From Lepidodermella squamata (Eukaryota > Animalia > Gastrotricha), in contig JBLDXI010000021.1 in assembly GCA_047495785.1 (NCBI GenBank), positions 496,001 to 560,000 on the forward strand: 64,000 bases of DNA, given 5' to 3'. The notes beneath the pieces were generated by a model. That model saw only the letters and a list, made by a program, of their open reading frames with translations. It was not told the origin of the DNA and ran no database searches. The stretch's first letter is position 1. Each line of letters opens with the position of its first letter. This document shows positions 22,888-54,325 of the stretch, one piece after another. Position numbers and translations under genes: made by a program.

Positions 22888-25800
22888 ATGTATGCATTGA
22901 CACTCGTCGGTTTTTTGTTTGGATGTTGCATTTCCTCCGTGGGTAGCTCTTGTGAAGATGTAAGAAAATGCGCAAATGATGTAGTGAATTTATCAAGTAA
23001 GTTGTCTACCTTCCCCATTATTTAAAAATCATTTTGTTTCGTATTTACTCAGGTCGAGCGTTAAGTGAAAAAAGACAAGCCAATAGCTATTTTGGACAGC
23101 TTTCTACGGTAGTGAATACTTCATATTTTTTGGCTCAGGCTCTAATTGAGCGTTATAAATTTTTAGTGTTCAGCTGTGCCGTCTAAACCGTCCGATCCGA
23201 ACTTTTGTTACTCGCTTCTCAATCTTGCAGTTTCTCAATTCCCTCCTTGTCCTGCAACCGCGCCGATAGCGCCGATTTCGGGCTCTGGATCATCTAGCGC
23301 AGAGAAAGATGTACCTCTTGCGAAGAGTGAAGGAAAGGAAGAAGATAAAGAAGAGAATGGAGAGACTGATTGGATCCTGTTTGGTGCCAAGGGTCAGACT
23401 TGGCTATTCACCTTCGGCTCAGTCATCGGTATCAGTGTCGCCGGATTTGCTTGCGTCATGATTTTACCTAGCATGTGTACCGTCTGTTACAACCACTTTC
23501 AACAATTTCTGGTGGCTATGGCCGTCGGAACTCTTTCTGGCGATGCCGTGCTACACTTGATTCCTCACTCATTCTTCTCTCATGAAGATCACGGCGCTGA
23601 GGAACCAGCCAACATGACTTTACTATCAAATGCTACAGAAGAGGCGGCTAATGCAGTTGAACACAGCGAGCAGAAAATTGTATGATGTTATAATTATAGG
23701 AATTGTTGACCAAGTCCAAATTACTTTTCAGGTGATGAAAGGATCTGTTTTATTGTTTGGATTGTTCCTGTTATACACCATCGAGCAGCTTTTTGCAATC
23801 GTCCCGTCGTATATGGCTGCTCGGCGAGCTAGACTAGCTCATGCAAATGAGCCACCGGCGGTTCGGGCCCGACTGGAAAGCACAGCGTCAAGACATTCCA
23901 AATTACGATTTGTATGTTTTAATAGTTGATATTCTGAATTCTTCTCTCCCACCTTGTTTTTTTGCGCGCATGTCCTAGTTTCGCACTTAATACGGCTTGC
24001 TTCAGTCCAGTTTTTTTCATTTCATTCTCTTCGAGGATATTTTTGAGGATCATCAGTGCATTGCGAGTCACGCTTTTGACTTTAATTTGAATCTGGAGTG
24101 GGTGATTTTGCGATTGTTATTAGCTCTAAAACCAATGAGCCGGAGCTGGCTGCGAACAATAAGAACAAGTGATTGCCTGTGTATCAAATCAAATATTGCG
24201 AGATTTCCGTCTCCTTATTGGCGCTGCTCAGAAAATGCCCGTCGATGATCACACGCCTATAGAGCGCCCACCAAATTGCGTTGATTATCTAGTGTTCTAT
24301 GCTGCATGTGCAATGTGTCTCTCGCTCTCGCCCAGAAAATCAATTTCGCTGCCGCTTTCGTTTGTTTGAGAATCGAAAACGCATGTGGGCGACCATGCGC
24401 GCGCGCACTGGGGAGCGAGTATTATTGCAAACGACATTTTATTTTTTCTGTGAAGCGCACAGGGATGTAGGATTTTTCGATCATGTGTATCGGTGTTCTT
24501 CCATCCGGTGCGCGACGATCTCTCTTGAGTGATGCTGGGTCGCTGAACAAACAGCCGCGAACAGACGCAGTAATTCTGCTGCTCCTTTAAATTTTAATAA
24601 CCATTGCACATTTAAATGACGGACCCTTTTTAACTCGTGTCTCTTGAAATGCTTTCCGTTTCCTGCCATCTCGCTGCGACGTGAAATTACAAACCCCATA
24701 CCTGCTGTTTGCACTTGACGAGCACGACAAATTTTCGTGATCGAATTTACGAAAAGCTTCGTTGAAATAATACGGATCGCTAGTTAGCGAAGGACAAAGT
24801 TGTGTTATTACCTAAACCGGTAGATGTTAAATCATTAATTGCTGCGCTTCAAGCAGTGGTGAGATGAATATTTGCGGTACCACGGAACGAAAATAAATTG
24901 TGTCATCAAACCGCCTGCGCACTCTCAACATGCTTTTAATGAGATGCCACCCTTAAGCTGGAATAACGCGCTCCATCGACGTTATATATCGACTAAGACA
25001 TGCCGATCATGCCTCATGAATTATAAATTAATTTGCGTCTTGCTGTACGCGCCGTGCCGTCATTGATTGATAGAGAAAGGGAGGCTGCGATGCCGGGTGC
25101 CGATTGACTAGGCGGCTTCTCTATGCGTTCCGTGCGACGCAGTGCATCAGAAAACGATCCGAATAAAATCGATGAATAAATGAATTATAAATTGTTGAGG
25201 GAAACGTTGAAATTAACTTTTGCATTGAATATAGGCTCCGAGTACTGGTGGCCATCGTCCTAGCCACGACCACGGGCACAGCCATGGTGGTCACGGTCAT
25301 TCTCACGGTGTGCCGAGGGATGAAAGCAATTATCATTACTCGGATATGGGTGGCGAAAACCACGACGACCACGACCACGAACAAGCAACACCTCTCGTTC
25401 ATTTTCACGACCACTGCGGCGGATCGGTCAGTTCTCACCATTACGTCCAGCCATCGGTGGCCTACTCGACATCGTGCGAAGAGGTCGTCTTCCGCCTGCA
25501 CAGCCACAACAGACGTAATTAAAAGAAAATTAATGATTGATTGAAATTAAAAATTGTAAAATCTATAAAAGTGCTCGAACAAAAGGAATGTGCTGTTGTC
25601 ACACCTTGCCCTCATCCTTGTGTTCCAGAGACACCCTGCGGCGATAAGCCAGGTAATAACCACCTGGATGTTAGCAGAGTGGCTAGTTTCAAATGTATGT
25701 ACCCCGTTTGTTTGCACGCGTGTCGTGTTATCTTAAAGGTGTGAATTTCGACGATGTGTTTTCAGGCGCCGAGCCGACACCCGCCCCGGAGTCGCATATG

Positions 25801-29529: not shown

Positions 29530-32500
29530 CTGGCATCCGGCGCGGCTGCGGGTTGATAGTGTCAGTAGTTGTTAGGCGCAAGGCTAGATAACAACCGGCC
29601 CGTGGCGCAGAAATTCATACTACAATAATATACGGTGCGGCACCTACGTGTGCGTTTTAGCGCATTCGCGACGGCGCTTGTCGCCCCGTCAGCTCGGTAT
29701 TTTTTTTTATCAGGAGCGAGCGCGTCGTTGTATATTGTGGCACACGGATAAAACACACGGCGAGACACGGTTCCTTTATTACTTTTTATGCCCGTGCACC
29801 GAGCGAGATGTGCGTGTGTTGAATGTACATAACCTTTTGTTATTGTTTACAACACTTTTTCGCCTCGCCGACCCGAGCGAGATCGAAGAAAAAATTACTA
29901 CCACCGCGCCAGTTGCTTCTCTCGCGCAGCTTTTCCACGCGTTTTAGCGTCATGCGCATGTATCATCATTATTATTTACAATTTTTCAACCGCAGCTGCG
30001 CTCTCGAAAGGCGCGATTTCTAGACCGTCATCAACCGAAACGCGCGTGCGATTTTGCGAAGTGTGGCGCGTTAGCAGCATAATCTCCATTAAAAGGGGCA
30101 ACAACAGCTTAATTTGCGAGAATAAAACGCTAGGCGCGTCGCGGAATAATTTGCGCTTAAAAAAACGCCGGTCATAAATCTCGCAATACACCTGGCTTTC
30201 GCATATTAATATCATCACCAACGCGATGTTATATAGCATCAAAACGAGGCGAGAATAGACATGAGGCTGTTTCTTCCCAACCGACCTTCGCGCACGGTAA
30301 AGTGCCTCTCCGACGCCGCGCGCGCGCGCGCAAGGATATGCATGGATAGGTCGAGGCATTTACGCGGCCCATTATCGGTTCGTCAAAAAAGCAGCAGTAT
30401 AGGCTGACAAGCGCATGCGCTCTTTTGCGACTATACCTTTATGCGCTCTTTACGCGCTCGACATGCAATACTACGTGGCGACGGTGGCGGCAGCGGATTT
30501 TAGCGGCGGCGCAAAATAAAAAATCATCCCTCACTTTTGCGAAGCGCGGCGACAACCACGCGCGTGTTTTATATGTGGGTCGCGTTCGTGCCAAAATTAT
30601 GCCGTAGCGCGCGGCCGCATCGTCTCGCGCGATGATGATTACTTCGCGCAATTTTTTTGCGCTCTCTAGTCTGCGCTTTCAGCCGGCTGTGTGTGCGCCG
30701 CCGCCGCTGCGAAGCGCGCGCGCGCAATATTTTTTATTATTTTTTTACGAAACACGGTCCGCCTATCGCTCTTTTTAGCCCGTTTTATAATACCATTATT
30801 ATTATTATATGACGTTTTGCCATGCTTTCCAGATACATTATTAGTTTGTATGTACAAACAACGTTCATTTACCACAAGTGCTGCTCTCGTGCTACGCGCT
30901 TGGATAGCGTAGGGTCAAGCGCGCAATGTATCAGTCGCTCAAATAATTAAGGGAGTCATATGCAGCTTTTTTGTGGCTACCTGTGTTGTAGTCATTGGCC
31001 ACCAGTGCCGCCACAGTAGCACCCGGCGATTGATCTTAAGTCGATTTTTCGATTACACGTTCAGTGTTAAACAATTTTTAGATTTCAGTTTGTGACCTAA
31101 TTTTTTGGGTAAAACCTATAACCTTTTTTATGATTGCATAGGTCTAATATTTCGCAGCAAAGGAACGCTAAGCTAAAATGAGCTAATCATGCGAAAAAAT
31201 AGCGATACAGCGCTTTTCAACGAGCTTTCGAAAGCTAATCTGATAACTAGTCATTTTCATTTGACAGCTGTAGTATTATAGCGTTAGATGTATTTTTTCC
31301 TAACCGTCTGAGTGTATGTATGTATATGTGTGTTTGATATATAGATGTGTGTATGTGTGCGGCTTTATTCGACCGCGCGCCGCGCGCCTGCCGTCACGCC
31401 GCCTCTGATAAAAGCGCTGTATTTGTTCATTTTTTGCGCGCATTTTTCGCCTCGCTCGCTCTCACTGCCTCTTTCGACTCATTTCGCAGTCGGCTGGCAG
31501 GCGTGTTCAACTTGTCGCCGTAATTATTTGGCTTAGCATTATATTATATTAAAACAATTAGGGGAAATAATATTTCTCATTATATTAAGGCGATTGCGCT
31601 TCGTTACTCACTGCTGGTGTTATAACTCGATTCAAACACCGCGCCTTTATACGCGCTGAAAGCGTTGCTTATCGCACCTTACCAATAGTATACTTGTCGG
31701 CGGTCGTGTAGGTTCGCCAAAATTGCGCCAGAGTTGCGCTTGCGCATAATCAGTCGTAAAATAATCGCGTCGTGGCGTGTTTTTGACGGCGACCCAGCCC
31801 TGCGTTCCGCATATCTGCAACGCACGCACCTGTGTTGCACAACCGCGTAAATTACCCGAGACCTGGTGGTGGTTGTGGCGGCGCTTGCTGGGGCGGTGGC
31901 TGCGCTGTCGTCGCCGGCGGCCTTGCGCTGCGCATAATCATCTCTATGCGCGCGCATTCAGTTTCCGCGCGCAGCTCTCGAGCGCGTTATTTTAGCGGCC
32001 GCGGCACTGGCAAACAGCCAATAACTCACTCACTAGCCGCGTTGGTTGGATGTTATTATATTATTACTATTATTATAACTACTCACCGCGAAAATTATTC
32101 AGCTGCGCGGCGGCGAATCTTGCCCGTGTAGCGCGCACGAGCGTCGTCCGTTCATCGCTCATCATAATCATCATCAGCCAGCCAACCCTTCTACTCGACG
32201 CGCAATGTGTACAGTTGCGCGCCCGCGCGATGTTGACCTTGAACGCTTCTTCCCTGCCCTACTCAAACGCGTGCTCAGCCTAAATACCGAGCTCTTCACC
32301 CCGCCGCAATTTTTCGCTCGCGATCTACCGTCACAATTAAAAAAGTCCACCTCAATAATGATACTCGCGTAAATTTTCGAATCTCAGGTTTTACGCTTGA
32401 ATATTAATCATCACACAGGACGAGACGGTGCGCATGCGGTGTGTTTAATGTTTTTATTGTTGCTAGTATTTTTTACGATATGTATTGCGCAGCGCTCATA

Positions 32501-35500
32501 GCTTCAACTTTTTTCGCGCTCAGTCTGCTATGCTTGGCGTGGATGAATTAAATGCGCGCCAAATGAATTCAAAATTTGTGTGATGTTTGTACTCGGCGCG
32601 CTTCTAAAGCCTCAACTCAGCTACTATTACGCGACGACGGGTGTGTGCGTTAAAAATACTGCTGTTGCCCCAGCCAGCCTCACTTTTTCATCATTCCACA
32701 TGACGCGTGCGGCGGGTTGAGAGCTCGAAAACTTGCGAATGCGTTTTCGTTATTCTTCTCCTGTGTTGCGCGATTACCATTATATTACACTCTCTTCGCA
32801 ATTCGCAACAAACAGTCGCTCAGATCAACGCACTTGTTGTGCTCATTTACGCGAACTTTATTCGATTTTATTACATGGCGGCTACCGACGGTCAAAGCGC
32901 CCACCGTCGACGAGCAAGTAGTTCAATTAGTGGGCCAGCACGTTGTTTGTGATGATTATTATTACTTCTTCGTTTCTTGATAACCACACCATTTATGGTA
33001 GGTATTTAGCATCGCTTTCGATGCGGTGTGAATGCTATTCTCACATTTCGGAATTTTTACCTTCCGGCAGCATGTGCGTGTTAGTGTCAAAGTGGTCTGC
33101 TGGCGCCAATTATCAAACATTGGGTGTATTTAATATCTCTCGTGGCGCTCTTTCCGGCACGATCTGTTAGTTTCGCCGGCGCGGTTGACAGCGCGAGTTT
33201 ATCCCTTGAAAAAGCGACGGCTGAGCACGCGGCGCCGGTATAGGTCGACTTGCGCGGTTCGTTATTAAAACCCGCGGCAAATAGGAGGCGGTCATTGGGT
33301 GCGGCAAGTCTACACTAATAATGAGCGAAACGTGGCGCATCCAGGCAGGAGCATCCAGTATAATATAATCCCAGGTCCTGCGCAATTTCGCCGCGCGCCC
33401 CCTGCAAACAAGCGCGCGCTCTTTTCTAACGCACGAACTACGCATTGCGTATAATATTCGAAATAGCACTGCCAATCTTCGGCGTTTCGCAACAAGTAAT
33501 AATGGAAAATCTACATCGCTCCGTTAATATTAGCCGCGATGAGGCAGTAGTTTGCCTTTTATTAGTAAAAGAGCGAATAGCGCGCGCGCGCATATTGATT
33601 CAGAGCGCGCCTGCCTTGCCGCAACGGCCGCGCGCAAACGGCACAAGCGCGCGCGCTTGCGCTGATAATAGACTGCAAAAATAAATGCAATGAAAGCATA
33701 GCCTTTACGCACGAGCCTTCTCTCGTTCGAGCCCTGGTACGCCGTGCTTCATCACTTCGCCTCGCTCGGCTTCGTAATAAAGCAATAATAATACAGTTTT
33801 ATTATTAATATTTCTTATAGCCTTCACTTTCTTGTTGCAGCGGCAGCTCAGCCGCCGTCTCGTAATCGTCACCGCGAGCGCGCGCGGTGCCGCTCACGTT
33901 ATAATGCCGCTATCTTTCGCGCGCGCTCATCGCTAAATTGCTGGCAAAGAGCGCGGCTTGTCATAAACGCGCTCAGGCCGTCAGCAGGTCCTTCCAGTTT
34001 TTTTCGACTTTTTTCGCACGCGCGTCTTCGCCAGGTGCGTTTGTTTTCGCGGCGGTTACACTCGAATCCAAAATGCAACACCTGCTCCGCCTAAACTAAT
34101 CAGCGAGAGAGCGAACGTTGTTAAATGTCACAGTTCCAATGTTTCTGACATTGCTATTTCTGTCTTGAACTAATTCGTCAACGTTTTTCGAGCGCTTCAT
34201 TATTTTTTGTCCCCGTAATATAGTTATGCGTCGCTGTAAATAGCGCGCTGTTTTTCGATCATTATCGGCGTGTTGGTGGTGTTGGCGTCGCGCACGTGGC
34301 GCGTTTTTTTCTTTCGCCCAGTGTTCGTAGCGTGCGTGATGCGGCAGGCAGCGCGCGACAGGAGTTGTGGCTGCCGACTTGTTGCGTGCATGCGACCCCT
34401 CAACACCGATGAGAAACATGAGCTGCCTCGCCTCGCGCCGCCAAGTGCATTCGACAACATATTTTGTACTCGCCCGACTATCGCACCATTTACCCGCTGT
34501 ATAATGCTATTATTACTCAGTATTACTATCGCTTTGGCTTTGGCGCCTACGTGGTGATGTCTAATAATAATAACATAATTGTTTGCGTTTGCTTGTGCGC
34601 GCGCGCAACTGGGCTGCCGAGCGCTTAGTTGATAAGCGCCTCGCCGAGCGCGCGTATCGCCGTCACTGTTCGCGCTCGGATCTGTTCGTTCGTCGCTGAC
34701 GACGGCGACGACAACGACGACGGCCGCGACCAACCACGAACGAGAGCGCGTGCGCACGACCGTGTTTTAATAATTCGCGCTTTAGTACTAGTGAATATAG
34801 CCGTCTTCTATGCTGTTGCTGCTGCTGCTACGTATAATATAAGCAGCAACATTTTCGCTGTTTTTATGTGTAGTCGTCGTATAATATCGGCGGCCGTGTA
34901 CCTCCTACACATGCGCGCGCGAATCGCAGCCCGTGTACAAACACACGGCATTTTACTATGCGCTGCGCATTTTTCGCCTTCGTTGCTCGCCTAATATAGC
35001 CTTCGCGCTCATTCGCTCGTTGACCGAGCGAGACAAGAGCGAGCGAGCGAGAGAGCGAACAGGTTTGCCACGGCAGTAACACACAAAAAATAAAGCTTAC
35101 GCGCTCTTGTAATTATTATTGTTGCGTCTCTTCTCTCGACGCGTTTTTTTACTGTTTTATAATACTGGCAAATTTTCTGTCATCGCGCTCGTTGGTGTTG
35201 GCGCCACATTTGCGTCGTTTCGTCAAAACGTCTTGTTGCTCCCATGTGCGCACGCGCCACACATTAAACCAAGCGCGCTCGTCTAGCTATTCGTTTTAAT
35301 AAGAATAATATTTGAAACTCTAGTTAAATAACAGCTGATGACTTGGCGCGCGCTTTCTTGATTTTGCGCGTCTCTTTTCATTTTTCGCTTTTTCTTTTCA
35401 AGAATCATCTAGTGTTTAATTTTACGTTTGCTTACTGCATGGACGGTTCGATCGCTATGGATGATCGGCTGCCGTCACAGCCTAATAAATGCGAAACAGC

Positions 35501-37640
35501 CAGTGAGGCTGCTGTCAGCGAGTCGCTAGTACTTGCTAGATCTGCATCACCTTCAGCCGCTTCTTCATCAGCACCTCTGCCCAACTCGGCGGAACTTGGT
35601 GATGACGCTGATATGTTGGACGATGCGGAAGTTGACGATGACAACGCGTCGGGCCCTGATGGCTTCCCAATGTGTGGCTCATCCTTTGCGATGGGTGTGG
35701 TCGCCGAGCCAAACCGATCTCCGACACCCCTTATGATGGGTGGCGGGACGGGCGAGTCACCTGAATCATCGGTAGGTGCCGCTGACGATGACTCATTCGG
35801 CGGTGCTCATTCACCGCAGCCATCTGGCTCCATTCCACCGGTTCGCCGTTCCCTGAACCAACCGGGCCCCAGCGCTCCGCAGCTGCCGCCTGATATCGAC
35901 GTTCTCAATGACGAAATCGGCGACATGCTTAAAGCTGCCGTCCTCACGACAATCGACGATTTGCGCCGGCGAAAGGCGCGTCCCAATTTAAAGAACATTG
36001 GTCACATGATGCTGCGACGACATGGCTGTTCTCCGCGTCAGGTCGAAGCCCTACTGGAATTTCTCGTCGAACGTGACATCGTCATTAAGGTTGATTACAA
36101 GGGACAAGCCAGCTACCGCAACGCCTCAAAATGGAAGAAGGGCCACATTTTGAAAGGTTTGTTGTTTATTTTCACTGTATTTTACCATTTATATAGGTAT
36201 TAAATTTTTTTACTATTATTGTTGTCACGACTTGAGTTTTTTTTTACGTCGAGAGTTTGTTAAAACATAGCTCGTGCTTCTATAGCGTAATTTTTTTACG
36301 CGTTTTTTTATGAAGAAATTATTGCGTGCGCGACGACATGTGCGGCGGCGACGACGGCGACGTGTGTGCGCGCAGGGTCACCGTCGTCAATTATTCCACG
36401 CTGAAATGTTATTATTATTTTTCGCGTATTAGTACAGCCGCAGTTTAGAGGAAGGCCCGCCTGCCTTCAATGCAGCTGATGATGATGATGATTATTACAA
36501 CGGCGGCGCATTTTTTGCGCAACGCCCCTCGATTATTTATAATATTGTGTATAATTATATTGCCGTCGGTTAGCTGTTGCCGTCGCCGCCGCCGCTGCTG
36601 CTGCAGATCAATTCATTTGCGCGTGCGCGCGCGGACTCATCGCTAGCGCACAAATTTTAGCGCGCACTATGCGCTCGCTCGCGCGCTTCTTCTACTCCTC
36701 ATTACGTGTTTGTCTGTGGCGCGCGCGCGCGCGCTCAGCTAATAACGGCGACTGCGCGCGCAAAAATTTTGCGCATCGTTGGCGCAACGCGTCGAAGGGG
36801 TGATAATATTATTAATATTGCGAGACCCGGCGGCCGCTCGCTCGTCGCTCGTCGCTCAAACAAGTGTCGCGCGAGGAAGGAAGGGCTTGATTGTTAAATT
36901 GGCCGGGGTGTCATCCATCCATCCTTGTAACCCGGATGGCTGCGGCTATTACTTTTGCGGCCGCATTATACTTATTAAAGCGCGGCTTTATTACCAAAAC
37001 GCATGCGCAGGGCTGGCCGCGCCGCGAGCGTTTTCATTAGCCCACCCGACACGCGACCCTTCGCCGGAGTTAGGTGCGTGAGCGCGGCGCATCTTCCGTT
37101 TGTTTATTACGCGCAGTTTTGTAATATATATAAATATCGCCTACGTCTTCACAGCCTATTTAGCATAGCGTTTGTTCAAGGTGCGCATGTACGCATGTAC
37201 GCTATGTATGAGCTGGAGCGAAACGCGATAGGCGCACAGCCGCAAAAACGCACGAATCATCGCTTCATTATCATCGCGAGCCGTTTGTGATGTCGATGGC
37301 TTGGTAATGATGATGATGACGGTAAAATTAATACTGCCGGAAAGTGCGCGCGCGCGCAACGCCTAAATTGGCGCGCCATGGCGAAATCGATGCGGAGCGC
37401 GCGCTTTGCGCATACTTGACGTTGTCGGCGGCGGCTGCGCGCCTATCGCGTTCGCCATCGCGAATATTTAGTTGGTAGTAGAAGGGAAATAATACTACTT
37501 TGTTATTGTTGATAGCGAGCGCAATAATGAGCGCACGCCCGTCGGCCAAGTGCGCTAATTTAGCGCAGGTAATAACGGCAGCCAGCCCGCCGCCGGCTAG
37601 TTTACACCTTCTTGGATTTGTTGACGATAATAATAATAAT
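29530..37640. promoter_or_regulatory. GCGC/CpG-dense non-coding domain (upstream region and first coding intron of the WH-PHD-SAM gene)
   Basis: Visible shift to abundant CGCG/GCGC runs, e.g. (CG)7C at 30317-30331 and (GC)8 at 36719-36734, interleaved with (ATT)n/(TAA)n and poly-T tracts. The next intron (38633-38978) is AT-rich and lacks them. A regulatory role is inferred. Confidence 0.6.
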
Positions 37641-39153
37641 AATGGCGCAAAGTTTTATTCGAGAGAAATAATCAAGTTAAATTGAAGAAATGAAATGAAA
37701 AAATGACTTTAATTTTTTCTTCAGGAACCATCATGAACCCAGCTCATATCAGCCGGTTGGTGCTAGATGTCATCACAGAACTTGAGCGCCGTTTGCCGAC
37801 CCAGGCCGGCGTGCACCCGGATGATATTGAAATGATGGTCCTAGCGAGGGCAGCTCAGCTGCAGGTGCCTATGAATAAGCAGAAATTCCTCGAAGCCATA
37901 ACTCGTGAGGTCGACCTCGGCCGGTTGCAGAAGTTGAAAAACGGCTTTTTCAAGGTCAACGAAGCCGCTCTTGCCAACTCATCTTCAGCTCAGTCCAGCA
38001 ACCAGTCTAATATTATTTCGCCGTTGAACATTCAACGCGGCCCGCCATCTATGGTTGTGTCGTCGTCGAATCGCAACTCGCTAGGCTCGAGCAGCGGCAG
38101 TGGCGGGTCGGGCATGACGCCGATCAAGCAGCACTCGCCGAATTCCATGGGCCAGTTTCGTAAAACCTCGCCGCAAGACCGCATGCTGGGCAGTAGCAAT
38201 AACCGGTTATCGCCGCCGAAAACGCAATACCCAAGCGATTTGAGCAACGAGCCGTCGTTGAAACGGCCGAAAATGACGCCGGGCGCGTCTGACTTCTCGA
38301 TTTCAACCGGTTTCTCCGCGGCGAACAGCGCCCACTCGCCTGGCCTGCAGCGCCTCACCTCGTCGTGCCGCATCTGCACGCTGCCGCTATCCGGTCCCGG
38401 CGCGTCGCCGTCGCTGCGAGGCGTCGTTCTCGGCGCCTCGGCTGTCAACAACAACAACGCCTCGTCTGATGTCACCCTGACCTGTGCAACTTGCCGCTTC
38501 TCTGTTCATTCCTCGTGTGCTGGCTACGCCCTTGACCAGGCGATGCGGTATCGCGAAACCGGTTGGATGTGCCCCTCGTGCCGAACTTGTACCTTTTGCG
38601 GATTCGGACCGAGTACCCAAGCTGGCGACGGGGTAAGACATTTATCTGTTCTTCTTAGATAATTTGGCAATATCCCCAATTTTCTTTGCATTTTGGAGGA
38701 AAAATTTGGGGGAAATTGAAAAATTCGAATTTTGAGGTAAAAATATATAAACGCGGAGAATTATGAAAAAGGGCATGGTTTTAAAGCTGGGCTCAAGACC
38801 ATTATTCTTGTATTTTCACAAAATTTATTGCTTATTTTTAGAAAAATCCTCTGAACTATTAGAATTTAAACATTTAATTTAAAAATATTTTTATGCATTT
38901 TTTCGAATTTTTTTAACTTTCCCCTATTAAGCAAAAACCTTTGAAATTCAATGAATAATTTTTTATTTTTTTCCTTAGATGCAACTTGTTGTTTGCGATC
39001 AATGCGACCGAAGTTATCACATGACGTGCCACATACCGCAACTTCTGACCTCGCCGGCGAAAGGTTCTCGTTGGTTGTGTTCCGCCTGCGATCTCCAACC
39101 CATCCCGTCTAATCGCCTCAACCGCGGAAGTGTTTCGGCACAAGTCCAAGCTC

Positions 39154-39185
<32 letters not shown>

Positions 39186-39748
39186 AAATCGCGGACTAAT
39201 TCATCCTCGCAAAACACTCGTTCTTCCAACGATGCGACGCCGTCGGTGAACGGTGGAGCGGCTAGCAATCACCGGTCGAGCAATGGCGTCGCGAGTCGAA
39301 CGGCAGTCGGCGGCCTGCCGACGCCGAGCGGCAGCGGCGAATCGACCGATGAAGACATTTCCGGTTCGCAGTTCATGCCAAGTGGCCCCGTACCCCCTGT
39401 CCCGCCTGGCCTGTCTGACCGCATAGCTGACTGGTCGATCGGTGATGTTGCTACCTACTTCCGTTCAGCTGGCTTCACTGATCAGGCTCGCCTAGTCTCA
39501 GATCAGGTAAAAATTTCAATTTTTTATTTTTAAATATTTTTAATAATTTTTTTAATTAGGAAATTGATGGTGCTGCGTTATTACTCCTGAAACGTGATGA
39601 TATCATTCACGAACTCGGCTTTAAGCTGGGGCCAGCTCTCAAAATTTATCAAATCATCGCTGCGTTGCAACGGAAAACAGTTCTGGCGAGTACATGCCAT
39701 GGCCCTGATGGCGTCGATGCCGCTGGACCCGACGTCATGGTCGGCTGA
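35439..39748 (+). CDS. SAMD1/KAT6-related chromatin reader: SAMD1-type winged helix, second (H15-like) winged helix, double PHD finger, Polycomb-type SAM
   Basis: Exons 35439-36156, 37725-38632, 38979-39506 and 39560-39748. WH: TIDDLRRRKARPNLKNI...KVDYKGQASYRN. DPF: CRIC..CATC..HSSC..WMCPSCRTCTFC..CDQCDRSYHMTC..WLCSAC. SAM: WSIGDVATYF..QEIDGAALLLLKRDDI..LGFKLGPALKIY. Confidence 0.88.
39153..39185 (+). repeat. (CAA)11 coding microsatellite, polyQ
   Basis: Pure CAA run within exon 3 of the WH-PHD-SAM gene. Confidence 0.95.
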
Positions 39749-42732
39749 TTGTTGTTTTACGAAATCCAGTCATCTCTCAAATGATTGTACGAAAGGATAA
39801 AAAAATCATTATATTTGAAACGCTTGTTGTCACCGCCGGAAGCATTTCTTTTGTATCAGCACTCTGACTTATTGTGATGATTTTTTTTGCAAGCTGCAAC
39901 TCTGCCGCGTAGCCTCTTCTTAAACGTCTTCTTCTCCTTATTATTATTACCATCACAGAAATTTATTCTAATCATTATTACAATCGTAACTATGGCAAAG
40001 TTCGATGTGCTAACTAAATCTCGCGAACTAGATTTCTATTCATGCAAAACAGCAGCACGCCTCGACTGAATTTCAACCAGAAAAAAATGCACTTGATATA
40101 CGGCTCACTTTCGCTATTTTTCCTCGCGCGTTTTCATGTAACTTGAAAAAAACAGTCAATTTTTTGGTTGGAAGTTTCTGCAATTGAAAAATGATTTCTA
40201 ACTGTGAACGCGTGGTATTTGATATAAAATGGTTAGATATACTTTCAGCTTTTCTTCTTATTCGGTAAACGTTGGCAAAATGTAAATATCTTTATTATAC
40301 GCGGTGGTTATTGAAGCGCCGTCAAATTTCTGTAAATAAGAATTTGTGAGCGGCTGAAAAAATTCGGTAAAAAATGTCTAGCGAGGCCTGCGTGCTTTTT
40401 ATCTCTGGGTTCGCTAACAAGATTAAATTTTTCAAACAAATGGATTCAAAATGACGATAATGTTGATTAAAAGATGATGATGTAAACAATAAAAATATGA
40501 CAAATCTTCATTCAAGTCTGTTTGTTGTTTTCAAAAAATCAGGCGTTAATGGCAAATTAGCCGCTGTCAATCGCTGCTCTCTGAATAAGATGATGCGGCG
40601 TCGTAAAAACACAGCCGAGTGTCACATAACGCGTCTCGCCTGATGAGGCACTCGAAGGCTACCTTTTCAACATGGCGTCTGCCTTAATCGGCTTTTAATT
40701 AATCGCGAAAAAAGGTGCGTCTTTCAATCGTCTCAATTGATCGAGCGCGCATCAATCCTCGGCGAAATTTCTGTTTTATCGCGCTAGGTAAACAAACCTC
40801 GCAAAAGCTACTTAGCCAGAGAAAAATTAATTTCGCCTCTTACACACAGCCAAAATCACCCAAAAGTGACGAAAATTTCGGTATAGATTTCTAGCATTAT
40901 TTGGTACTTTGTGACCGTATATAGGTCCTCCGCCTTCCAACTGCTAATATGTACGAAATAATGTTATTTACGGGGATAATTGTTTTCTATTTTTACAACC
41001 TTATATGGTCGCTGTTATGCCTTGGGGATAAAGGCGCAGCACGTTGCAAGGCTTGCGTTTTCGCGCAAATTTTGGTCGACGTTTGTTGACGCGCTTTACC
41101 ACCTAGAGCGCAGCCGTTTACGCGCGAGTGCGGTTCTGCCGCGCTTGCTTGAGACGCGTCGTCCAGAGTTCACGCAAATGTAGGCTCAGCGAACCTTGTA
41201 AGAACGTACCCAAAAGCAGCAGTTTAATAGGATAACAAAACGATAAAATTCACTCGTCATGCCAGCTTTTATATCCCGAAATGCAATGGACTGCTGTGTG
41301 GAATTTAACAACTTATAATTAATATGTAACAAATTTACTAACCCCATCAATGATACATGCAGAGTTTTCTCTAAAAGTTTGCATCCCGTCATAAAAAAAC
41401 GATCACACGATCTATTGATGCCCTTCCTCAACTTCGGCTATTTTTTGCTACTTAAGCCTGGTTATCTCAGTCTCGGGGTCATTGCAATTTTAATCCAACA
41501 AAAAGTTATAACATTTATGAAGTAAACCTCTCCTTTGGTGGATATTCGAAATCTGAGCCTTTTCTGGCTATTCTCGCTGAAAAATCATCCAAAAATCCTT
41601 AGCTAAAGCTTGCTTCGCTCGCGTCATTCTCTGCAGAAATTGCATGTAGGTCTTGGAAAATATTGGAAATTTCAAGAGAAAATAGCCATGCAGGCGCGAT
41701 ATTTCTATTTTTAGCTTGGTTTTCTGGGCGTTTAGATGAGCGGATTGGAATTCTTTGAGGTCGCAAATTCGCTTCAAGGTTCTTTTAGGTCGCCAGCAAC
41801 GACGCATCTTTAACCAAATCCAAGAATTTTTGAAATTGATCACGGTGCAATCCATCTATTCAACAATTTACAATCCAACTAATTCTTGTTGAGCTGATCA
41901 TCACTATTCCTACTATAAACTTAACCTCGGGTATAAAGAAAATTCGGTCTGTACCAAAAGTATAAAATTGAGGCACTTATTCCTCCGTGTTTTCATTATT
42001 CAATAATAGCAAGTATGAATCTTGACTGAGAAACGTATTTACGCCATTTCCATTTCCCATGCCCCACGCTGATACCTAAAATTAAACAACAATCCAGTTT
42101 CCGTGACATGGTTTTTATTGACACAATAATCTTCAAGCTATAACGCTGCCTACCTTGCGTGGATGACTGCTCACAATTATTTTGAAATACCAACGCATTC
42201 TGCTGGGTAATATTTTCAAGAAGCGGACGAAAAAGTACCACGCGCTAAAACCAGATGAAGTTCTTTTTATGGAGCGCGCCGCCCCCCAGGAGAGCGCTCA
42301 CGCGATAAACAGTCAAAAACTTGCGGAGCGTAACGTTGTCGACGAAACTCAAAAATCTCATTGTTGACAGCGGCGCGTTCAGCGACGGGCGCCTCATGTC
42401 ACGCGGCATTGTCGCCACGCTTTGTTCTGGTCCTTGCTTGCTGTACACATCCCACTGTTTTGCGACCACTTTTTGCCCAAACAGAAGCAGCGCCATATCA
42501 CACGCTTTTCCGCTGCAGCCGTTGTCGCCTTTATTTGGTCTAAATTGGTTTATTGTGCGCGCTATGACAATATTATTATTACCATAACCTGTAATTCGTA
42601 AACGCGGCGTCTTACATAAGGTAAACAAAACGAAATTGCGTTGCTCCTTCCTTGAATCGCCGTTTAAATTTTGCTAAAAAATTTAGCGATTGTTTTAATA
42701 CATTGTAACAGCGATCCAGTTGCACGGAAATT

Positions 42733-45539
42733 ATGGGGCGGTGTCGCGATGGTTTCGGCGCAACCGCTTTACTTTTCATCGCTACATTATCGGCAAAAGT
42801 TCAAGCTGTAACAAGTAATGATTCGAATACCGTTTCAAGTTGCCAAGATATAACTTTCTTTAAAATTAGTTGGATGTCCGACAAATGCGTTACCTTATGT
42901 GAATGCTGCCACAACTAAACTCAACTTTCCTCCCCCTTACAATCTATCCCCGATCGGAGGCACTGTTTTGTACATTTGCGATGCTGGGTACGACCTTGTC
43001 GGATCGGCTAATGTTACATGTCTTTCAACATCGCGCTGGAGTCGTTCGCCTCTCTGTTTAAAACGTAAGAATTATTATTACGATTTACTAAATTTAATTG
43101 GTGAAAAGATGGAATATTTTCAAATGCGAAGAAGCTTGCTTGTGAAACGTCGAATTGGGAAGTACTTTATCTCTTAACGTTCTGGCGAAACACTTACTGC
43201 GTAGATAGGCTTCAATGTAACTGGCCGCTTAGCTCAGTTGGTTAGAGCGTCGTGCTAATAACGCGAAGGTCGTGAGTTCGATCCTCCCAGTGGCCACATG
43301 TTTTTACTGTTTTTTTATTTTATTTATTATTTTATTTTTTCAATAATTACTAAGAAATGAGTGAAGCAATTTGAGCAGAGACAGAATTTTCAGAAATTCC
43401 GAAGTTTATTCCCCACTATTTCTACAATTCTTTTCAGGAAACGGAGACGCGAAGCAGCAAATGAGCGGCGATGCAATGAGCATGCAGTTGCTGTACCAGC
43501 CGAAAGTGCTTGGTCAACTGAATCCCTCCCAAGTAGTTCGAGACTCCATCGCGCAACCGGAACAGGGTGTCTCAAACGACCAAATGTCGCAGTTTTCAAA
43601 GAGTCAAAAAGTAGCCGACGAATATTACATAATTTCACCTGGAAACAGTAACACAAATACGCGATTCGTGTCCAGCGACCAGCCAAAAGACACGCCTAGT
43701 ATCCAACCAACAAAGCAATCTATCGCTATGCTGTTCGCTAACAGCCGGCCAAGCACCGAACCTATCCCCCAGCTGTATCCTAAAACAGGAGGAGCAGCCA
43801 TGCAGTTTTGCCCGCCGGCTCCCAAGTTGGAATACGCTGATGTCTCTGCTACATCAATTTGGCCGGGAGACATTGCTCGAGAAGGAGATACAGTCGATGT
43901 AAATTTTAAAATGTACCTTCAAGGTCAATTTTATTGTTTTAATAATTTTAGTACAAATGCTTGGAAGGCTTCATGGATCAGCATAACTACGGTACTCTAC
44001 TTCGGATGACCTGTGCATCGGGTGGGGTGTGGCGGAGTGAGTTTGATGCCTCATCTCGGAAGCCACTTTGCGTTCCCTCGATGGCACGTTGGCCGAAGGT
44101 GGAACAAAAACCAGCCCCAGTTGAGGAAGTCCCTATGTTGATGCGTAAGCCATCCGTCGTAGCAAATTTACCGCAGCCAGTTAAGGCGAACCAAGGCGAA
44201 TCTATTCTACTTGTGCCTCCCATGGAGCCGCCGAAACCGGCCCCCGAGCCTAAAAAGGATGATGAAGATGCGCCTATGATTCTGCGGAAAGAGGACAGCG
44301 GAAACGCAGCTTTGCCTAAACCCGTTAAAGCTATCGAAAACAACGGTGATTCAGGGTCTTCTGGATCGAATCTAGCCTCTCAGTTCCAGCAAAAAGCACC
44401 AGCAAAAACCGACAATAATGGTTTGCCGAGAATGACTTGCTAGGCGGCATCACTTAAATGTTTATTTTCCCAGTTTTCAAGTCTGCGCCAGTGGCTGTTC
44501 CTTTCGAGACGAGCGAAGATGAGGCTGAAAGCGAGGAAAATCAAGAAAATGAAAATGAAAATGAAAAGGAAAAGCAAAGTAATTTCAATCATTTTTTTTT
44601 AATATTTCTTTCAACGTTTTAATTACTCATATAGTGGATGTTCCTGGCATCATCGGGAATATCAAGGCGTTCTTAGAGGTAACCAAGCCAGTGGCTGCAA
44701 AGAAACTGGTGACTTGCGGCCCGGCGCCTGACGTTGTTTCTGCCGGTGTGATAAACCAATCCTTCAACAATCGGACATCAAAGCCGTCCGATTGGGTGCA
44801 GTACGAATGCGAGCGAGGCCTAAGTATGGTTGGCGACTCTTTTGTCATCTGCATGCGCGACGGCCGGTGGCAAACGATGGAAGGCTCTCTGCCGCTCTGC
44901 ATGGCGGAAAAGTGGTGCGATGACCCGCCGAAAATCACTTCGACTACGCTCGAACCGATCAACAAGACATCTGAGTGGGAGTACGCAGTTCACACGCATC
45001 AATACCCACCAGGCACTGTGCTTAGGTACAAATGCCAGCCACCTGAGTTTTTGATCGAAAGCGGCGCGGGAGAAATCGAGTGCAAAAAAGACGGCAAGTG
45101 GACTCAATCTTCGATTCAATGCATACGTAAGTGCGTGACAATGATTTCTAATGTGCCCTAATTTCGAGATTGTCCAGCGAGATTCAGACGTGAGTTCTGC
45201 TCACCGCCGCCTCTTATCAGAGGGGGCCATCCAATTTCGTTCACCGGCCTCGGCATAGGTGCGACAGCCACCTACGTGTGTGATCCTGGATTTCATTTTC
45301 TTTCAAAACAAACCGCAGGTGAGTGTCTCTCTTACGTCAATCATCCCTAGATTCTAGCTGTGTCACATCGTGTAGGGTGCAATCGATACGGCCAATGGTC
45401 GCCACTCCCTATCTGTGCTGCGTTCAAACATCGGTCGGCCGATCGAAGCGAGAAGACAAGCACGACTAGCATAAATAATAGCCTTAACAACAACAATAGC
45501 AAAGAACTCGGCAAGAGCGAAGCGGCGGCGTCGAATTAA
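42733..45539 (+). CDS. Secreted multi-sushi (CCP/SCR) protein with low-complexity linkers
   Basis: Signal-like N-terminus. About five CCP modules (YICDAGY..VTC..W..PLC; CPPAP..C..W..LC; CGPAP..YECERG..C..W..LPLC; CDDPP..YKC..W..C; CSPPP..YVCDPGF..QWSPLPIC). No TM helix; stop at 45537-45539. Confidence 0.85.
43223..43296 (+). tRNA. tRNA-Ile (anticodon AAT)
   Basis: The cloverleaf folds: acceptor GGCCGCT/AGTGGCC, D-arm GCTC/GAGC, anticodon TCGTG-CTAATAA-CGCGA, T-loop TTCGATC, discriminator A. A poly-T Pol III terminator follows just downstream. Confidence 0.95.
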
Positions 45540-53198: not shown

Positions 53199-53403
53199 TG
53201 TTTAAAGCTTTTATTGTTGCTTCCTTCCAAGAAAATACAAGTGCATTCTTCAAGTATCATAATTTGTTGTTGGCTGTTTTCATGAAGCTGTAGTCAATTG
53301 GCGCGAAGGAGTTGAGAATCGCGATTCTACGTCAGGGTCATATCCCTCCAATTTTAAAATTTGTATTTCCCCTTCCAACTTTAGTGAATATTTAATTGAA
53401 GAA

Positions 53404-54325
53404 ATGCCTGGTAGAAGCCGCTCCGGTTCAACCTCGAGCGATGATTCCAGCTCGTCCAGCGACTCAAGCAGCTCAGGATCGTCATCGGACTCGTCATCAA
53501 GCTCGTCCAGCTCATCTTCGAGCAGCGCGTCCGACCGCGGCCAACGTCGCCGGTCGCCGCCTCAGCGAGGTGGCCCTCCCCGTCGTGATGACAGCCGAGA
53601 CCGAGATCGAGACCGGCGCGCCCCGGCTCGCCGACGATCGCGATCCGCGTCTCGATCGCCACCCCATCGAGGCGGCCGAGTGTCACCGCCGCGTCGCCGG
53701 GCATCTCCTCCGCGGCGCGATGACCGTGACCGCGATCGGGACCGCGAAAGAGGAGATCGAGATCGCGACATTCGAAAACCGCGGGGCGATCTTGCTAACC
53801 AGGAGAACAAGCAACCCAATGATGAGAAGCCGGCAACAGAAGCTCGTTCGTCACCCTCCCGTGATCGGGAAAGACCGGCCCGTAGACGCAGCCCGTCTCC
53901 CGCCCAACAACAGCCGCCGAAGCCCCTTACTACAATTCAAGTTGGCCGTTTGACGCGGAACGTGACTCGTGAACACCTGATGGAGATTTTCGGCACATTT
54001 GGAAAGATCAAGACTCTCGACATGCCAACTGAGCGTTTACACCCGGAATTTAACCGTGGCTATGCTTATGTTGAATACGAAACACCAGAGGAGGCTGCTG
54101 AGGCGATGAAATTGATGGATGGCGGACAAATTGATGGCGCTGAAATTATTGTTTCCACTCCTCGGGACGGTATAATTGGACAAATGTTCGAGACCGTTAA
54201 ATTTATGTAATTTTCTTTTCATAGTGCCGAAAGCTCGTAACGAACCAGGTGATCGCAGGGTTGCGGCTGGTGCCAGGTCTCGCTCTCGCAGTCCTCGTCG
54301 CCGACGTAGGTCGGGCAGTCGATGA
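53404..54325 (+). CDS. RNPS1: RNA-binding protein with serine-rich domain 1 (EJC/ASAP component)
   Basis: Poly-Ser and RS/RD region. RRM IQVGRLTRNVTREHLMEIFGTFGKIK..RGYAYVEYE..AMKLMDGGQIDG. A short last exon ends at 54325. Confidence 0.92.

What the first reader, a model, noticed from the sequence alone, without database searches (positions are those of the whole stretch)
29530..39748. A GCGC/unmethylated-CpG reader gene embedded in its own ~8 kb GCGC island: candidate autoregulatory CpG-island system in an invertebrate
Seen: from the end of the ZIP 3'UTR to exon 2, non-coding DNA becomes saturated with GCGC/CGCG runs separated by ATT/poly-T tracts, unlike the housekeeping clusters in this window. 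The only gene inside encodes a winged helix with RRRKARP and YKGQASYRN. Known: the SAMD1 winged helix (RKARP...YKG..SYRN) binds unmethylated CpG in a GCGC context, and SAMD1 represses CpG islands through a SAM domain that can polymerise. Inference: the protein may coat its own locus through multivalent GCGC binding plus SAM oligomerisation. That would be a feedback loop and a CpG-island/Polycomb-response-element-like mechanism in a lineage where CpG islands are not normally described.
Basis: partly seen in the sequence, partly recalled or inferred. Interest (0 to 1): 0.85.

Follow-up and report, generated by a model that had tools for sequence, protein, structure and literature searches.

The report
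GCGC-dense island around SAMD1-like gene
An invertebrate gene for a SAMD1-type reader of unmethylated GCGC DNA lies in about 7.4 kb of non-coding DNA packed with GCGC words, and a related species keeps this composition at the same place without keeping the sequence, but nothing yet shows that the protein binds or regulates its own locus.

Summary
The non-coding DNA at 29530-35402 and intron 1 (36157-37724) carry 27-34 GCGC per kb, against 3.9 per kb in the other 54 kb (213 seen, 29 expected). The rise comes only from CG and GC steps (x1.9). GG, CC, GGCC and CCGG are not enriched, so this is alternating (GC)n, not general GC-richness. There are no repeats, transposons, Rfam RNAs or hidden conserved exons.

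The gene (ATG 35439, four exons, 781 aa) is a SAMD1/Atherin orthologue. It has a SAMD1_WH domain (E 1.8e-22), 8 of 9 DNA-contact residues identical to human SAMD1, a double PHD finger and a SAMD1-type SAM domain. This architecture is common in arthropods and molluscs.

New here: a syntenic orthologous locus from a related species has the same signature upstream of the gene (GCGC x9.9, GCGCGC x44), although the non-coding DNA no longer aligns. Composition is maintained, not sequence. Short GCGC clusters (0.3-0.9 kb) also occur elsewhere in the window, several in places that look like gene 5' regions, so this island may be an oversized form of a general feature.

Self-binding, feedback, methylation state and genome-wide outlier status could not be tested. 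No other note of the scan on this genome mentions such islands.

The parts
29530..35402 (.). Upstream GCGC/(GC)n-dense non-coding domain. It runs from just after the ZIP gene's AATAAA (29455) to the AG (35401-35402) before the start codon. It consists of irregular GCGC clusters of 100-600 bp separated by 11 GCGC-free AT-rich gaps of 150-290 bp.
   Evidence: 27.1 GCGC/kb, CpG o/e 1.70, GpC o/e 1.81, GC 48.8%. Gaps. No significant periodicity. No long repeats. No Rfam hit. No DNA or protein-level alignment to the orthologous island. T>A skew of -0.09 to -0.20, like the gene's introns.
35439..36156 (+). Exon 1 of the SAMD1-like gene: acidic, low-complexity N-terminus and the winged helix. It is followed by a phase-1 intron.
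   Evidence: ORF and translation; Pfam; aligns to L001 exon 1 at 77% DNA identity; covered by X1 contigs.
35937..36122 (+). SAMD1_WH domain, with RRRKARP (major-groove CpG contacts) and YKGQASYRN (wing, minor-groove and backbone contacts).
   Evidence: PF21524 E 1.8e-22; 6LUI Atherin E 6.9e-16 and KAT6A WH1 E 0.0021; contact residues from PMC8115922; these residues are invariant across 9 family members.
36157..37724 (+). Intron 1 (1,568 nt, GT..AG), the second part of the island. It is GCGC-dense to about 37620 and then has an AT-rich 3' splice region.
   Evidence: 34.4 GCGC/kb, CpG o/e 1.88. The reading frame continues across the junction. The orthologous intron in L001 is only about 613 nt, with about 3 GCGC. 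(GC)n length differences against run X2 at 36719, 37345 and 37397.
37725..38632 (+). Exon 2: a helical region after WH1 (possible WH2, not confirmed here), a Ser-rich linker and PHD finger 1.
   Evidence: PHD E 1.1e-06. No PDB sequence match for residues 1-98 of this exon. The 3' junction is confirmed by an X1 joint, 38631->38978, GT..AG.
38979..39506 (+). Exon 3: PHD finger 2, a poly-Q run, a linker and the first half of the SAM domain.
   Evidence: PHD E 5.3e-09; CAA x11 repeat at 39153-39185; X1 joint 39504->39558, GT..AG.
39560..39748 (+). Exon 4: the second half of the SAM domain and the stop codon.
   Evidence: SAM_1 E 0.0049 on this half-domain. The orthologous uninterrupted SAM domain in L001 matches the SAMD1 SAM structures 6LUK/6LUJ at E 1.3e-16, ahead of Ph, Sfmbt and L3MBTL3.

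Best explanation
The island is a maintained cis-regulatory platform of the SAMD1/Atherin orthologue. It comprises about 5.9 kb of upstream DNA, probably transcribed as a leader, plus the 1.57-kb first intron. It is built of hundreds of short alternating (GC)2-4 words set between AT and T tracts. It looks like a greatly enlarged version of the short GCGC clusters seen elsewhere in this window, in a genome without CpG depletion. The inferred mechanism is multivalent, low-affinity binding of readers of unmethylated CpG/GCGC: SAMD1-type and KAT6-type winged helices, and possibly CXXC proteins. These would set the chromatin state of the locus. The gene's own product is one plausible occupant, because it has the conserved GCGC-contacting residues and a self-associating SAM domain. 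Shown: the composition, its limits, its absence from the exons, its conservation in a second species without sequence conservation, and the identity of the protein. Inferred: that the words are binding sites, which proteins bind them, and any effect on transcription.
For: The island is extreme and specific to the alternating C/G context. It is unique DNA, not repeats, transposons or a known RNA. The syntenic locus L001-L003 (ZIP, a 6.4-kb gap, WH/PHD/SAM, Sushi, RRM) shows the same signature in the 5 kb upstream of the gene: CG x1.92, GC x2.07, GG x0.70, GCGC x9.9, GCGCGC x44. The two islands share their top enriched 5- to 7-mers. Only exons align between the two loci. Shorter GCGC clusters lie at 24.2-24.7, 40.9-41.3 and 42.1-42.6 kb, upstream of the ZIP and Sushi coding ORFs (transcript starts not mapped), and at 9.8-12.3 kb. 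Distant orthologues L007 and L008 also have CpG/GCGC-enriched 5' regions of 2-4 kb. The enriched word matches the published in vitro preference of SAMD1-WH (GCGC) and KAT6A-WH1 (GCGCG). The protein's contact residues are conserved. CpG-dense promoters bound by CFP-1 are described in unmethylated C. elegans (PMC4079969).
Against: There are no binding, chromatin, methylation or expression-perturbation data. The transcription start is unknown. Genome-wide frequency of such islands is unknown, so the link to this particular gene could be coincidence. No specific transcription-factor motif stands out beyond GCGC. The orthologous intron 1 is short and not GCGC-rich, so that part of the island is not conserved. 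Over-long (GC)n runs and their length polymorphism show that slippage contributes.
Confidence: 0.5

Rival explanations
1. One reading: a dedicated autoregulatory loop. The SAMD1-like protein coats its own locus through many WH-GCGC contacts plus SAM self-association and represses (or buffers) its own transcription. The island exists and is maintained because of this feedback.
For: The densest GCGC target in 64 kb surrounds the gene for a GCGC reader. Contact residues are conserved. The SAM domain is closest to the self-associating SAMD1 SAM. SAMD1 needs both WH and SAM for chromatin binding and acts as a repressor (PMC8115922, PMC11969672). The association is kept in a second species by composition alone, as expected if the number of sites matters and their exact sequence does not. 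The bias is for GCGC rather than CpG in general (28% against 7% of CpGs in GCGC).
Against: No binding or perturbation data exist. No autoregulation is mentioned in the two SAMD1 papers searched. Other GCGC/CpG readers would see the same DNA. More distant orthologues have only ordinary-sized 5' CpG-rich regions. Short GCGC clusters occur at other genes. The pairing was noticed after the fact and the genome-wide base rate is unknown.
Confidence: 0.2
2. A largely neutral by-product. A field of decaying and re-expanding (GC)n microsatellites persists in open, transcribed leader and intron DNA through replication slippage or structure-prone alternating purine-pyrimidine tracts. It has no site-specific regulatory role.
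For: Longer alternating runs exceed first-order expectation (GCGCGCGC 31 against 5.5; runs up to 16 nt). Two-base indels in (GC)n runs differ between the window and run X2 (36719, 37345, 37397). There is no conserved sequence block and no periodic organisation. The T>A skew suggests the region is transcribed.
Against: Most of the signal is short GCGC and CGCGC words (92 runs of 4 nt, 41 of 5 nt), not long arrays. The same signature is confined to the same interval in a species whose non-coding DNA is otherwise unalignable. Other intergenic DNA and introns 2 and 3 lack it. A neutral process would have to be targeted to this locus in both lineages.
Confidence: 0.2
3. GC-biased gene conversion at a recombination hotspot raised the GC content locally.
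For: GC content rises from about 41-44% to about 49%. Hotspots at CpG-rich promoters are known in some animals (general knowledge, not tested here).
Against: The rise comes only from CG and GC steps. GG, CC, GGCC, CCGG, GGGG and CCCC are flat or depleted. The exons and introns 2 and 3 inside the same locus are unaffected. AT and T tracts persist.
Confidence: 0.03
4. The region hides another gene, a transposon remnant or a structured RNA locus that explains its composition.
For: GC-rich ORFs of 70-177 aa occur on both strands. X1 contigs give low depth at 33900-34299 and 36700-37899.
Against: tblastx and blastn find no conserved ORF or block against the orthologous island. No repeat families beyond 16-34-nt compositional matches. 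No Rfam family. The low RNA depth fits unspliced precursor RNA.
Confidence: 0.04

Closest known systems
Vertebrate CpG islands bound by SAMD1 (Stielow et al. 2021, PMC8115922)
   Same: Clusters of GCGC-containing CpGs are the preferred target of a SAMD1 winged helix. Binding needs WH plus a self-associating SAM domain.
   Different: Vertebrate islands stand out because the bulk genome is methylated and CpG-depleted. Here the bulk has CpG o/e of about 1.2 and the island o/e of 1.7-1.9, an active excess. The GC content is only 49%, G and C runs are depleted, and AT/T tracts are interspersed. The domain is 8 kb long. The protein also carries a double PHD finger that vertebrate SAMD1 lacks.
CpG-dense promoters / HOT regions bound by CFP-1 in C. 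elegans (Chen et al. 2014, PMC4079969)
   Same: CpG clustering at regulatory regions of an animal genome without CpG depletion, read by a protein that binds unmethylated CpG. The short GCGC clusters elsewhere in this window resemble these.
   Different: This domain is 7.4 kb of non-coding DNA with a marked GCGC/(GC)n bias.
KAT6A/KAT6B (MOZ/MORF) N-terminal WH1-WH2-DPF module (PMC9881136, PMC9908889)
   Same: WH1 belongs to the same subfamily (7Y43, E 0.0021), prefers GCGCG in vitro, and is followed by a second helical domain and a double PHD finger, as in this protein.
   Different: This protein has no MYST acetyltransferase domain and ends in a SAMD1-type SAM domain. Its WH is much closer to SAMD1 (E 6.9e-16).
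Drosophila Polycomb response elements
   Same: Multi-kb, multivalent cis-elements are thought to recruit SAM-domain chromatin repressors (Ph, Scm, Sfmbt). The SAM domain here is related to theirs.
   Different: No PHO sites, few GAGA runs, and PCL-type TCGG is depleted. The sequence grammar is different.

Membership tests
SAMD1/Atherin protein family | N-terminal atypical winged helix of the SAMD1_WH type | tested here: met
   PF21524 E 1.8e-22, 79.7 bits against a cut-off of 24.5; 6LUI E 6.9e-16.
SAMD1/Atherin protein family | DNA-contact residues R43, R45, K46, R48, R56, Y87, K88, S92, R94 (PMC8115922) | tested here: met
   8 of 9 are identical and R56 is His. The same 8 are invariant in 9 invertebrate family members.
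SAMD1/Atherin protein family | C-terminal SAM domain of the SAMD1 type | tested here: met
   The L001 orthologue's SAM domain matches 6LUK/6LUJ at E 1.3e-16, ahead of Ph at 2.2e-10. The window's exon 4 half is identical over the stretch EIDGAALLLLKRDDIIHELGFKLGPALKIYQI. In the window itself Pfam SAM_1 reaches only E 0.0049, because an intron splits the domain. Ring or polymer formation was not tested.
SAMD1/Atherin protein family | Preferential binding of unmethylated GCGC DNA | not testable with these tools
   Needs EMSA, PBM or SELEX with the recombinant WH domain.
Invertebrate WH-DPF-SAM subfamily (database names 'Atherin', 'KAT6B-like') | Domain order SAMD1_WH, two PHD fingers, SAM | tested here: met
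   Window gene. The same order is seen in P0004, P0031, P0038, P0093, P0100 and P0106 (P0086 shows one PHD stretch). Atlas clusters with this domain set are commonest in Arthropoda and Mollusca.
CpG island (classical sequence criteria) | Length over 200 bp, CpG o/e over 0.6, G+C over 50% | tested here: inconclusive
   Length and o/e (1.7-1.9) are far exceeded. G+C is 48.5-48.8% overall and 46.5-51.4% per kb, so it straddles the threshold.
CpG island (biological sense) | An unmethylated island in a methylated, CpG-depleted bulk genome | tested here: not met
   Bulk CpG o/e in the window is 1.17-1.18, so there is no depletion to escape from. Methylation itself was not measurable. The sister locus has flanks at 0.5-0.9, so the contrast is partly present there.
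Drosophila-type Polycomb response element | Clusters of PHO (GCCAT), GAGA and related motifs | tested here: not met
   PHO-type sites 0, GAGAGAG 2, TCGG 2.0/kb against 3.65/kb outside.
Autoregulatory loop | The product binds its own locus and changes its own transcription | not testable with these tools
   No ChIP, CUT&Tag or perturbation data. Only RNA-type contigs showing that the gene is expressed and spliced.

The most novel reading that the evidence does not exclude
The SAMD1 orthologue (WH + DPF + SAM) self-associates over a site-number-selected field of more than 200 GCGC words around its own gene and so sets its own dosage. That would explain why two species keep the GCGC count at this locus while the sequence has turned over completely. 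It would be an example of a CpG-island-type system maintained by selection for reader binding rather than by escape from methylation decay.
Probability: 0.2. Interest if true: 0.75.

Novelty: new variant of a known kind. Interest (0 to 1): 0.5.

Why it matters
Why CpG islands exist, and whether their readers shape them, is hard to separate from DNA methylation in vertebrates. Here a CpG/GCGC excess (o/e 1.7-1.9) is held in place in a genome that shows no CpG depletion, and a related species keeps it by composition only. That cannot be explained by protection from methylation-driven decay. It points to selection on word number or to a locus-targeted mutational process. The locus encodes an unstudied invertebrate SAMD1 orthologue that still carries the KAT6-like double PHD finger. 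It therefore offers a compact system (one gene, one 8-kb domain, two species) for testing multivalent reader binding and possible dosage feedback. If islands like this prove common in the genome, the finding reduces to a description of this lineage's promoter style.

Tried and rejected
1. Repeats, transposon or satellite: only 16-34-nt compositional matches were found, and tandem repeats are tiny.
2. Known RNA families: none in the island.
3. Hidden conserved exon or conserved non-coding block: blastn, blastn-short and tblastx against the orthologous island found only exons 1 and 2 and simple-sequence matches.
4. Specific factor motifs: NRF1, E2F, BANP, DRE, GAGA, PHO, PCL TCGG and KAT6 CCGNCGG are none of them enriched beyond the general GCGC enrichment.
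5. Periodicity: 10-bp A/T periodicity (PATC-like) and nucleosome-scale periodicity of clusters give weak or no signal, and the 290-bp peak lies below the shuffle 95% level.
6. GC-biased gene conversion: rejected on context-specificity.
7. More relatives: the exhaustive protein search found only one close relative (P0001) and a multi-WH protein (P0002). The 90%-cluster search added nothing useful. The JGI metagenome scan found none. P0093 has no contig on record.
8. Genome-wide outlier test: not possible. The genome's proteins are not in the searchable collections, and the scan's notes hold no other mention of 'GCGC' and only one unrelated mention of 'CpG'.
9. Organism identity: not established. 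Run and organism names are coded, and a paper search for assembly GCA_030522445 gave nothing.
10. WH2 by sequence: no PDB match.
Full report
OBSERVATION. The window has 43.5% G+C and CpG o/e of 1.27 overall, so it comes from a genome without CpG depletion. GCGC and CGCG counts per kb jump from 0-11 to 15-35 between about 29.5 and 37.7 kb.

I split the region by the gene model. The upstream non-coding stretch 29530-35402 has 27.1 GCGC/kb, CpG o/e 1.70 and GpC o/e 1.81. Intron 1 (36157-37724) has 34.4 GCGC/kb and CpG o/e 1.88. The two flanks of the window have 3.9 and 3.8 GCGC/kb. The gene's own exons have 3.8/kb, and introns 2 and 3 have none.

At the background rate 28.8 GCGC are expected in the 7,441 non-coding bases, and 213 are present (log10 P = -107). 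GCGCGC is enriched 28-fold. Inside the island, 93% of 300-bp windows hold 6 or more GCGC+CGCG, against 8% outside.

The enrichment is not general GC-richness. CG and GC steps rise 1.95- and 1.88-fold, while GG (0.82), CC (0.96), GGCC (1.03), CCGG (1.0), GGGG (0.56) and CCCC (0.81) do not. 28% of the island's CpGs lie in GCGC, against 7% elsewhere. Alternating runs are longer than the island's own dinucleotide content predicts: GCGCGCGC 31 seen against 5.5 expected, with runs up to 16 nt.

The words form irregular clusters separated by eleven GCGC-free, AT-rich gaps of 150-290 bp. There is no significant 10-bp or nucleosome-scale periodicity. One correction: the island ends at about 37.62 kb, so 37725-39748 is gene, not island.

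WHAT IT IS NOT. There are no repeat families beyond 16-34-nt compositional matches, only trivial tandem repeats, and no Rfam family in the island. The ORFs of 70-177 aa on both strands have no counterpart in the orthologous island by tblastx. Named motifs (NRF1, E2F, BANP, DRE, GAGA, PHO, PCL-type TCGG, KAT6-type CCGNCGG) are not enriched beyond the general GCGC effect. PHO sites are absent and TCGG is depleted, so the grammar is not that of a Drosophila Polycomb response element.

THE GENE. The start codon is at 35439. The exons are 35439-36156, 37725-38632, 38979-39506 and 39560-39748, giving 781 codons plus the stop with the frame kept across all junctions. Contigs of run X1 behave as RNA: zero depth in intron 2, and GT..AG joints at 38631->38978 and 39504->39558. 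They confirm introns 2 and 3 and cover the exons.

Pfam finds SAMD1_WH (E 1.8e-22), two PHD fingers (1.1e-06 and 5.3e-09) and the second half of a SAM domain. The WH domain matches the SAMD1-DNA complex 6LUI at E 6.9e-16 and KAT6A WH1 at 0.0021. Stielow et al. list nine DNA-contacting residues (R43, R45, K46, R48, R56, Y87, K88, S92, R94; PMC8115922). Eight are identical here and R56 is His. The same eight are invariant in nine invertebrate family members.

The orthologue's uninterrupted SAM domain matches the SAMD1 SAM structures at E 1.3e-16, ahead of Ph, Sfmbt and L3MBTL3. The protein is therefore a SAMD1/Atherin orthologue that also carries a double PHD finger. This architecture recurs in many proteins. 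Database clusters named 'Atherin' or 'KAT6B-like', commonest in arthropods and molluscs, carry it, so it is not peculiar to this genome. I found no paper on these invertebrate proteins.

COMPARATIVE EVIDENCE (new). The exhaustive search with exon 1 found one close relative, P0001 (69% identity). It lies on three 22-36-kb metagenome scaffolds with the same gene order: ZIP, a 6.4-kb gap, WH/PHD/SAM, Sushi, RRM and (on the two longer loci) HATPase_c.

In L001 the 5 kb upstream of the WH exon hold 60 GCGC (12/kb) against 1.2/kb in the other 15.7 kb. The dinucleotide signature is the same (CG x1.92, GC x2.07, GG x0.70, GCGC x9.9, GCGCGC x44). The top enriched 5- to 7-mers are shared with the window's island.

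Between the two loci only coding exons align (72-80% identity). The islands share nothing but simple-sequence matches. The composition is thus kept at the same place while the sequence has turned over. The conservation is partial, because the orthologous intron 1 is about 613 nt with about 3 GCGC. The sister locus also has lower CpG o/e in its flanks (0.5-0.9), so there the island stands out more in the classical sense.

More distant orthologues, in CpG-depleted genomes, show ordinary 2-4-kb CpG-rich 5' regions. L008 has GCGC x5.7 over 4 kb and L007 x6.6 over 2 kb. L005 has little, and L006 shows a broad region with o/e of about 1. The multi-WH gene in L004 has none. These loci lack matched controls, so they say only that a CpG-rich 5' end is usual for this gene family.

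CONTEXT IN THE WINDOW. Short GCGC/CGCG clusters (0.3-0.9 kb) occur at 9.8-12.3, 24.2-24.7, 40.9-41.3, 42.1-42.6, 53.4-53.9 and 61.0-61.4 kb. The 24.2-24.7 kb cluster lies upstream of the ZIP coding ORF. The 40.9-42.6 kb clusters lie upstream of the Sushi ORFs. The 9.8-12.3 kb clusters lie near a minus-strand Ig-domain ORF at 8.7-9.5 kb. Two clusters lie inside GC-rich coding ORFs. No transcript starts were mapped. The sister locus has small peaks at comparable places. The island may therefore be an extreme case of a general feature of this genome, comparable to the CpG-dense, CFP-1-bound promoters of unmethylated C. elegans (PMC4079969).

The upstream island has the same T>A asymmetry as the gene's introns (AT skew -0.09 to -0.20; 33 T5+ against 10 A5+ tracts), whereas the downstream intergenic DNA is near neutral. 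X1 gives low depth at 33900-34299 and 36700-37899. Both hint that much of the upstream island is transcribed as a long leader.

MECHANISM. I favour (0.5) a maintained cis-regulatory platform that works through multivalent, low-affinity binding of readers of unmethylated CpG/GCGC. The enriched word is what SAMD1-WH (GCGC) and KAT6A-WH1 (GCGCG) prefer in vitro, and SAMD1 needs SAM-mediated self-association for chromatin binding. The gene's own product is therefore a plausible occupant.

The stronger claim is that the island exists because of a self-repressing loop. I rate it at 0.2. The GCGC-specific bias and the composition-only conservation favour it. But nothing shows binding, the two SAMD1 papers searched mention no autoregulation, other readers would see the same DNA, and the base rate of such islands in the genome is unknown.

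A neutral slippage field in open, transcribed DNA (0.2) is supported by over-long runs and by 2-bp (GC)n indels between the window and run X2 at 36719, 37345 and 37397. It does not easily explain why most of the signal is 4-5-nt words confined to the same interval in two species. Biased gene conversion and a hidden gene are disfavoured.

LIMITS. I could not scan the genome. Its proteins are not in the searchable collections and the JGI metagenome scan found no relative. The scan's notes on 1,993 windows of this genome contain no other mention of 'GCGC' and only one unrelated 'CpG' note. That is weak evidence that such islands are not conspicuous elsewhere. The organism was not identified, because run and organism names are coded. 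Methylation, binding and regulation are untested.

VERDICT. The protein identification is confirmed. This is a new variant of a known kind: CpG-reader target domains. Its most interesting property is a positive GCGC excess conserved by composition alone in a genome without CpG depletion.

Noticed in passing
window 35439-39748 (exons): The SAMD1-like coding sequence is depleted of GCGC relative to its own dinucleotide content (9 seen, 24.9 expected, P = 0.0002; CGCG 11 against 25.9), although it is 57% G+C. Other ORFs in the window are depleted less (40 against 61.2 in total). The exons thus look like holes in the island.
   Followed up: partly
window 9800-12300, 24200-24700, 40900-41300, 42100-42600, 53400-53900, 61000-61400: Short GCGC/CGCG clusters of 0.3-0.9 kb. 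Several lie upstream of coding ORFs (ZIP, Sushi) or near the Ig-domain ORF, and two lie inside GC-rich RRM-gene coding ORFs. They may be this genome's ordinary promoter style, but no transcript starts were mapped.
   Followed up: partly
window 43223-43296 (+): A tRNA gene (Rfam RF00005, 60.7 bits) lies among the ORFs of the Sushi-domain gene region.
   Followed up: no
L001 (whole locus) against the window: The related species has clearly lower CpG o/e in gene bodies (0.5-0.9; 0.52 over the RRM gene) than the window (1.0-1.3 for the same genes). The two relatives may differ in CpG methylation or in mutational bias.
   Followed up: no
L004 (GCA_030522445.2, JALIZG020000965.1): A predicted 850-aa protein (P0002) with three SAMD1_WH domains lies next to another SAMD1_WH gene. 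A separate protein from the search, P0003, has two WH domains. This suggests tandem expansion of the WH domain in some lineage, with no PHD or SAM domain and no GCGC island.
   Followed up: partly
L006 1-20035 (GCA_018292915.2): Two SAMD1_WH+PHD genes lie head to head about 9 kb apart, and the region between them has CpG o/e near 1 in a CpG-depleted genome. This looks like a paralogue pair sharing a CpG-rich 5' region.
   Followed up: no
window 36719, 37345, 37397 and 35025: Run X2 (a DNA assembly of another individual or strain, about 1% different) differs from the window by 2-base indels inside (GC)n runs and by a 15-base deletion in the GAGC/GAGCGA repeat near 35025. The island's simple runs are length-polymorphic.
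   Followed up: no
window 37727-38020 (+): The helical region right after WH1, which another reader calls WH2, has no sequence match in the PDB (best E 0.32, a ribosomal protein). Its fold was not tested here.
   Followed up: partly
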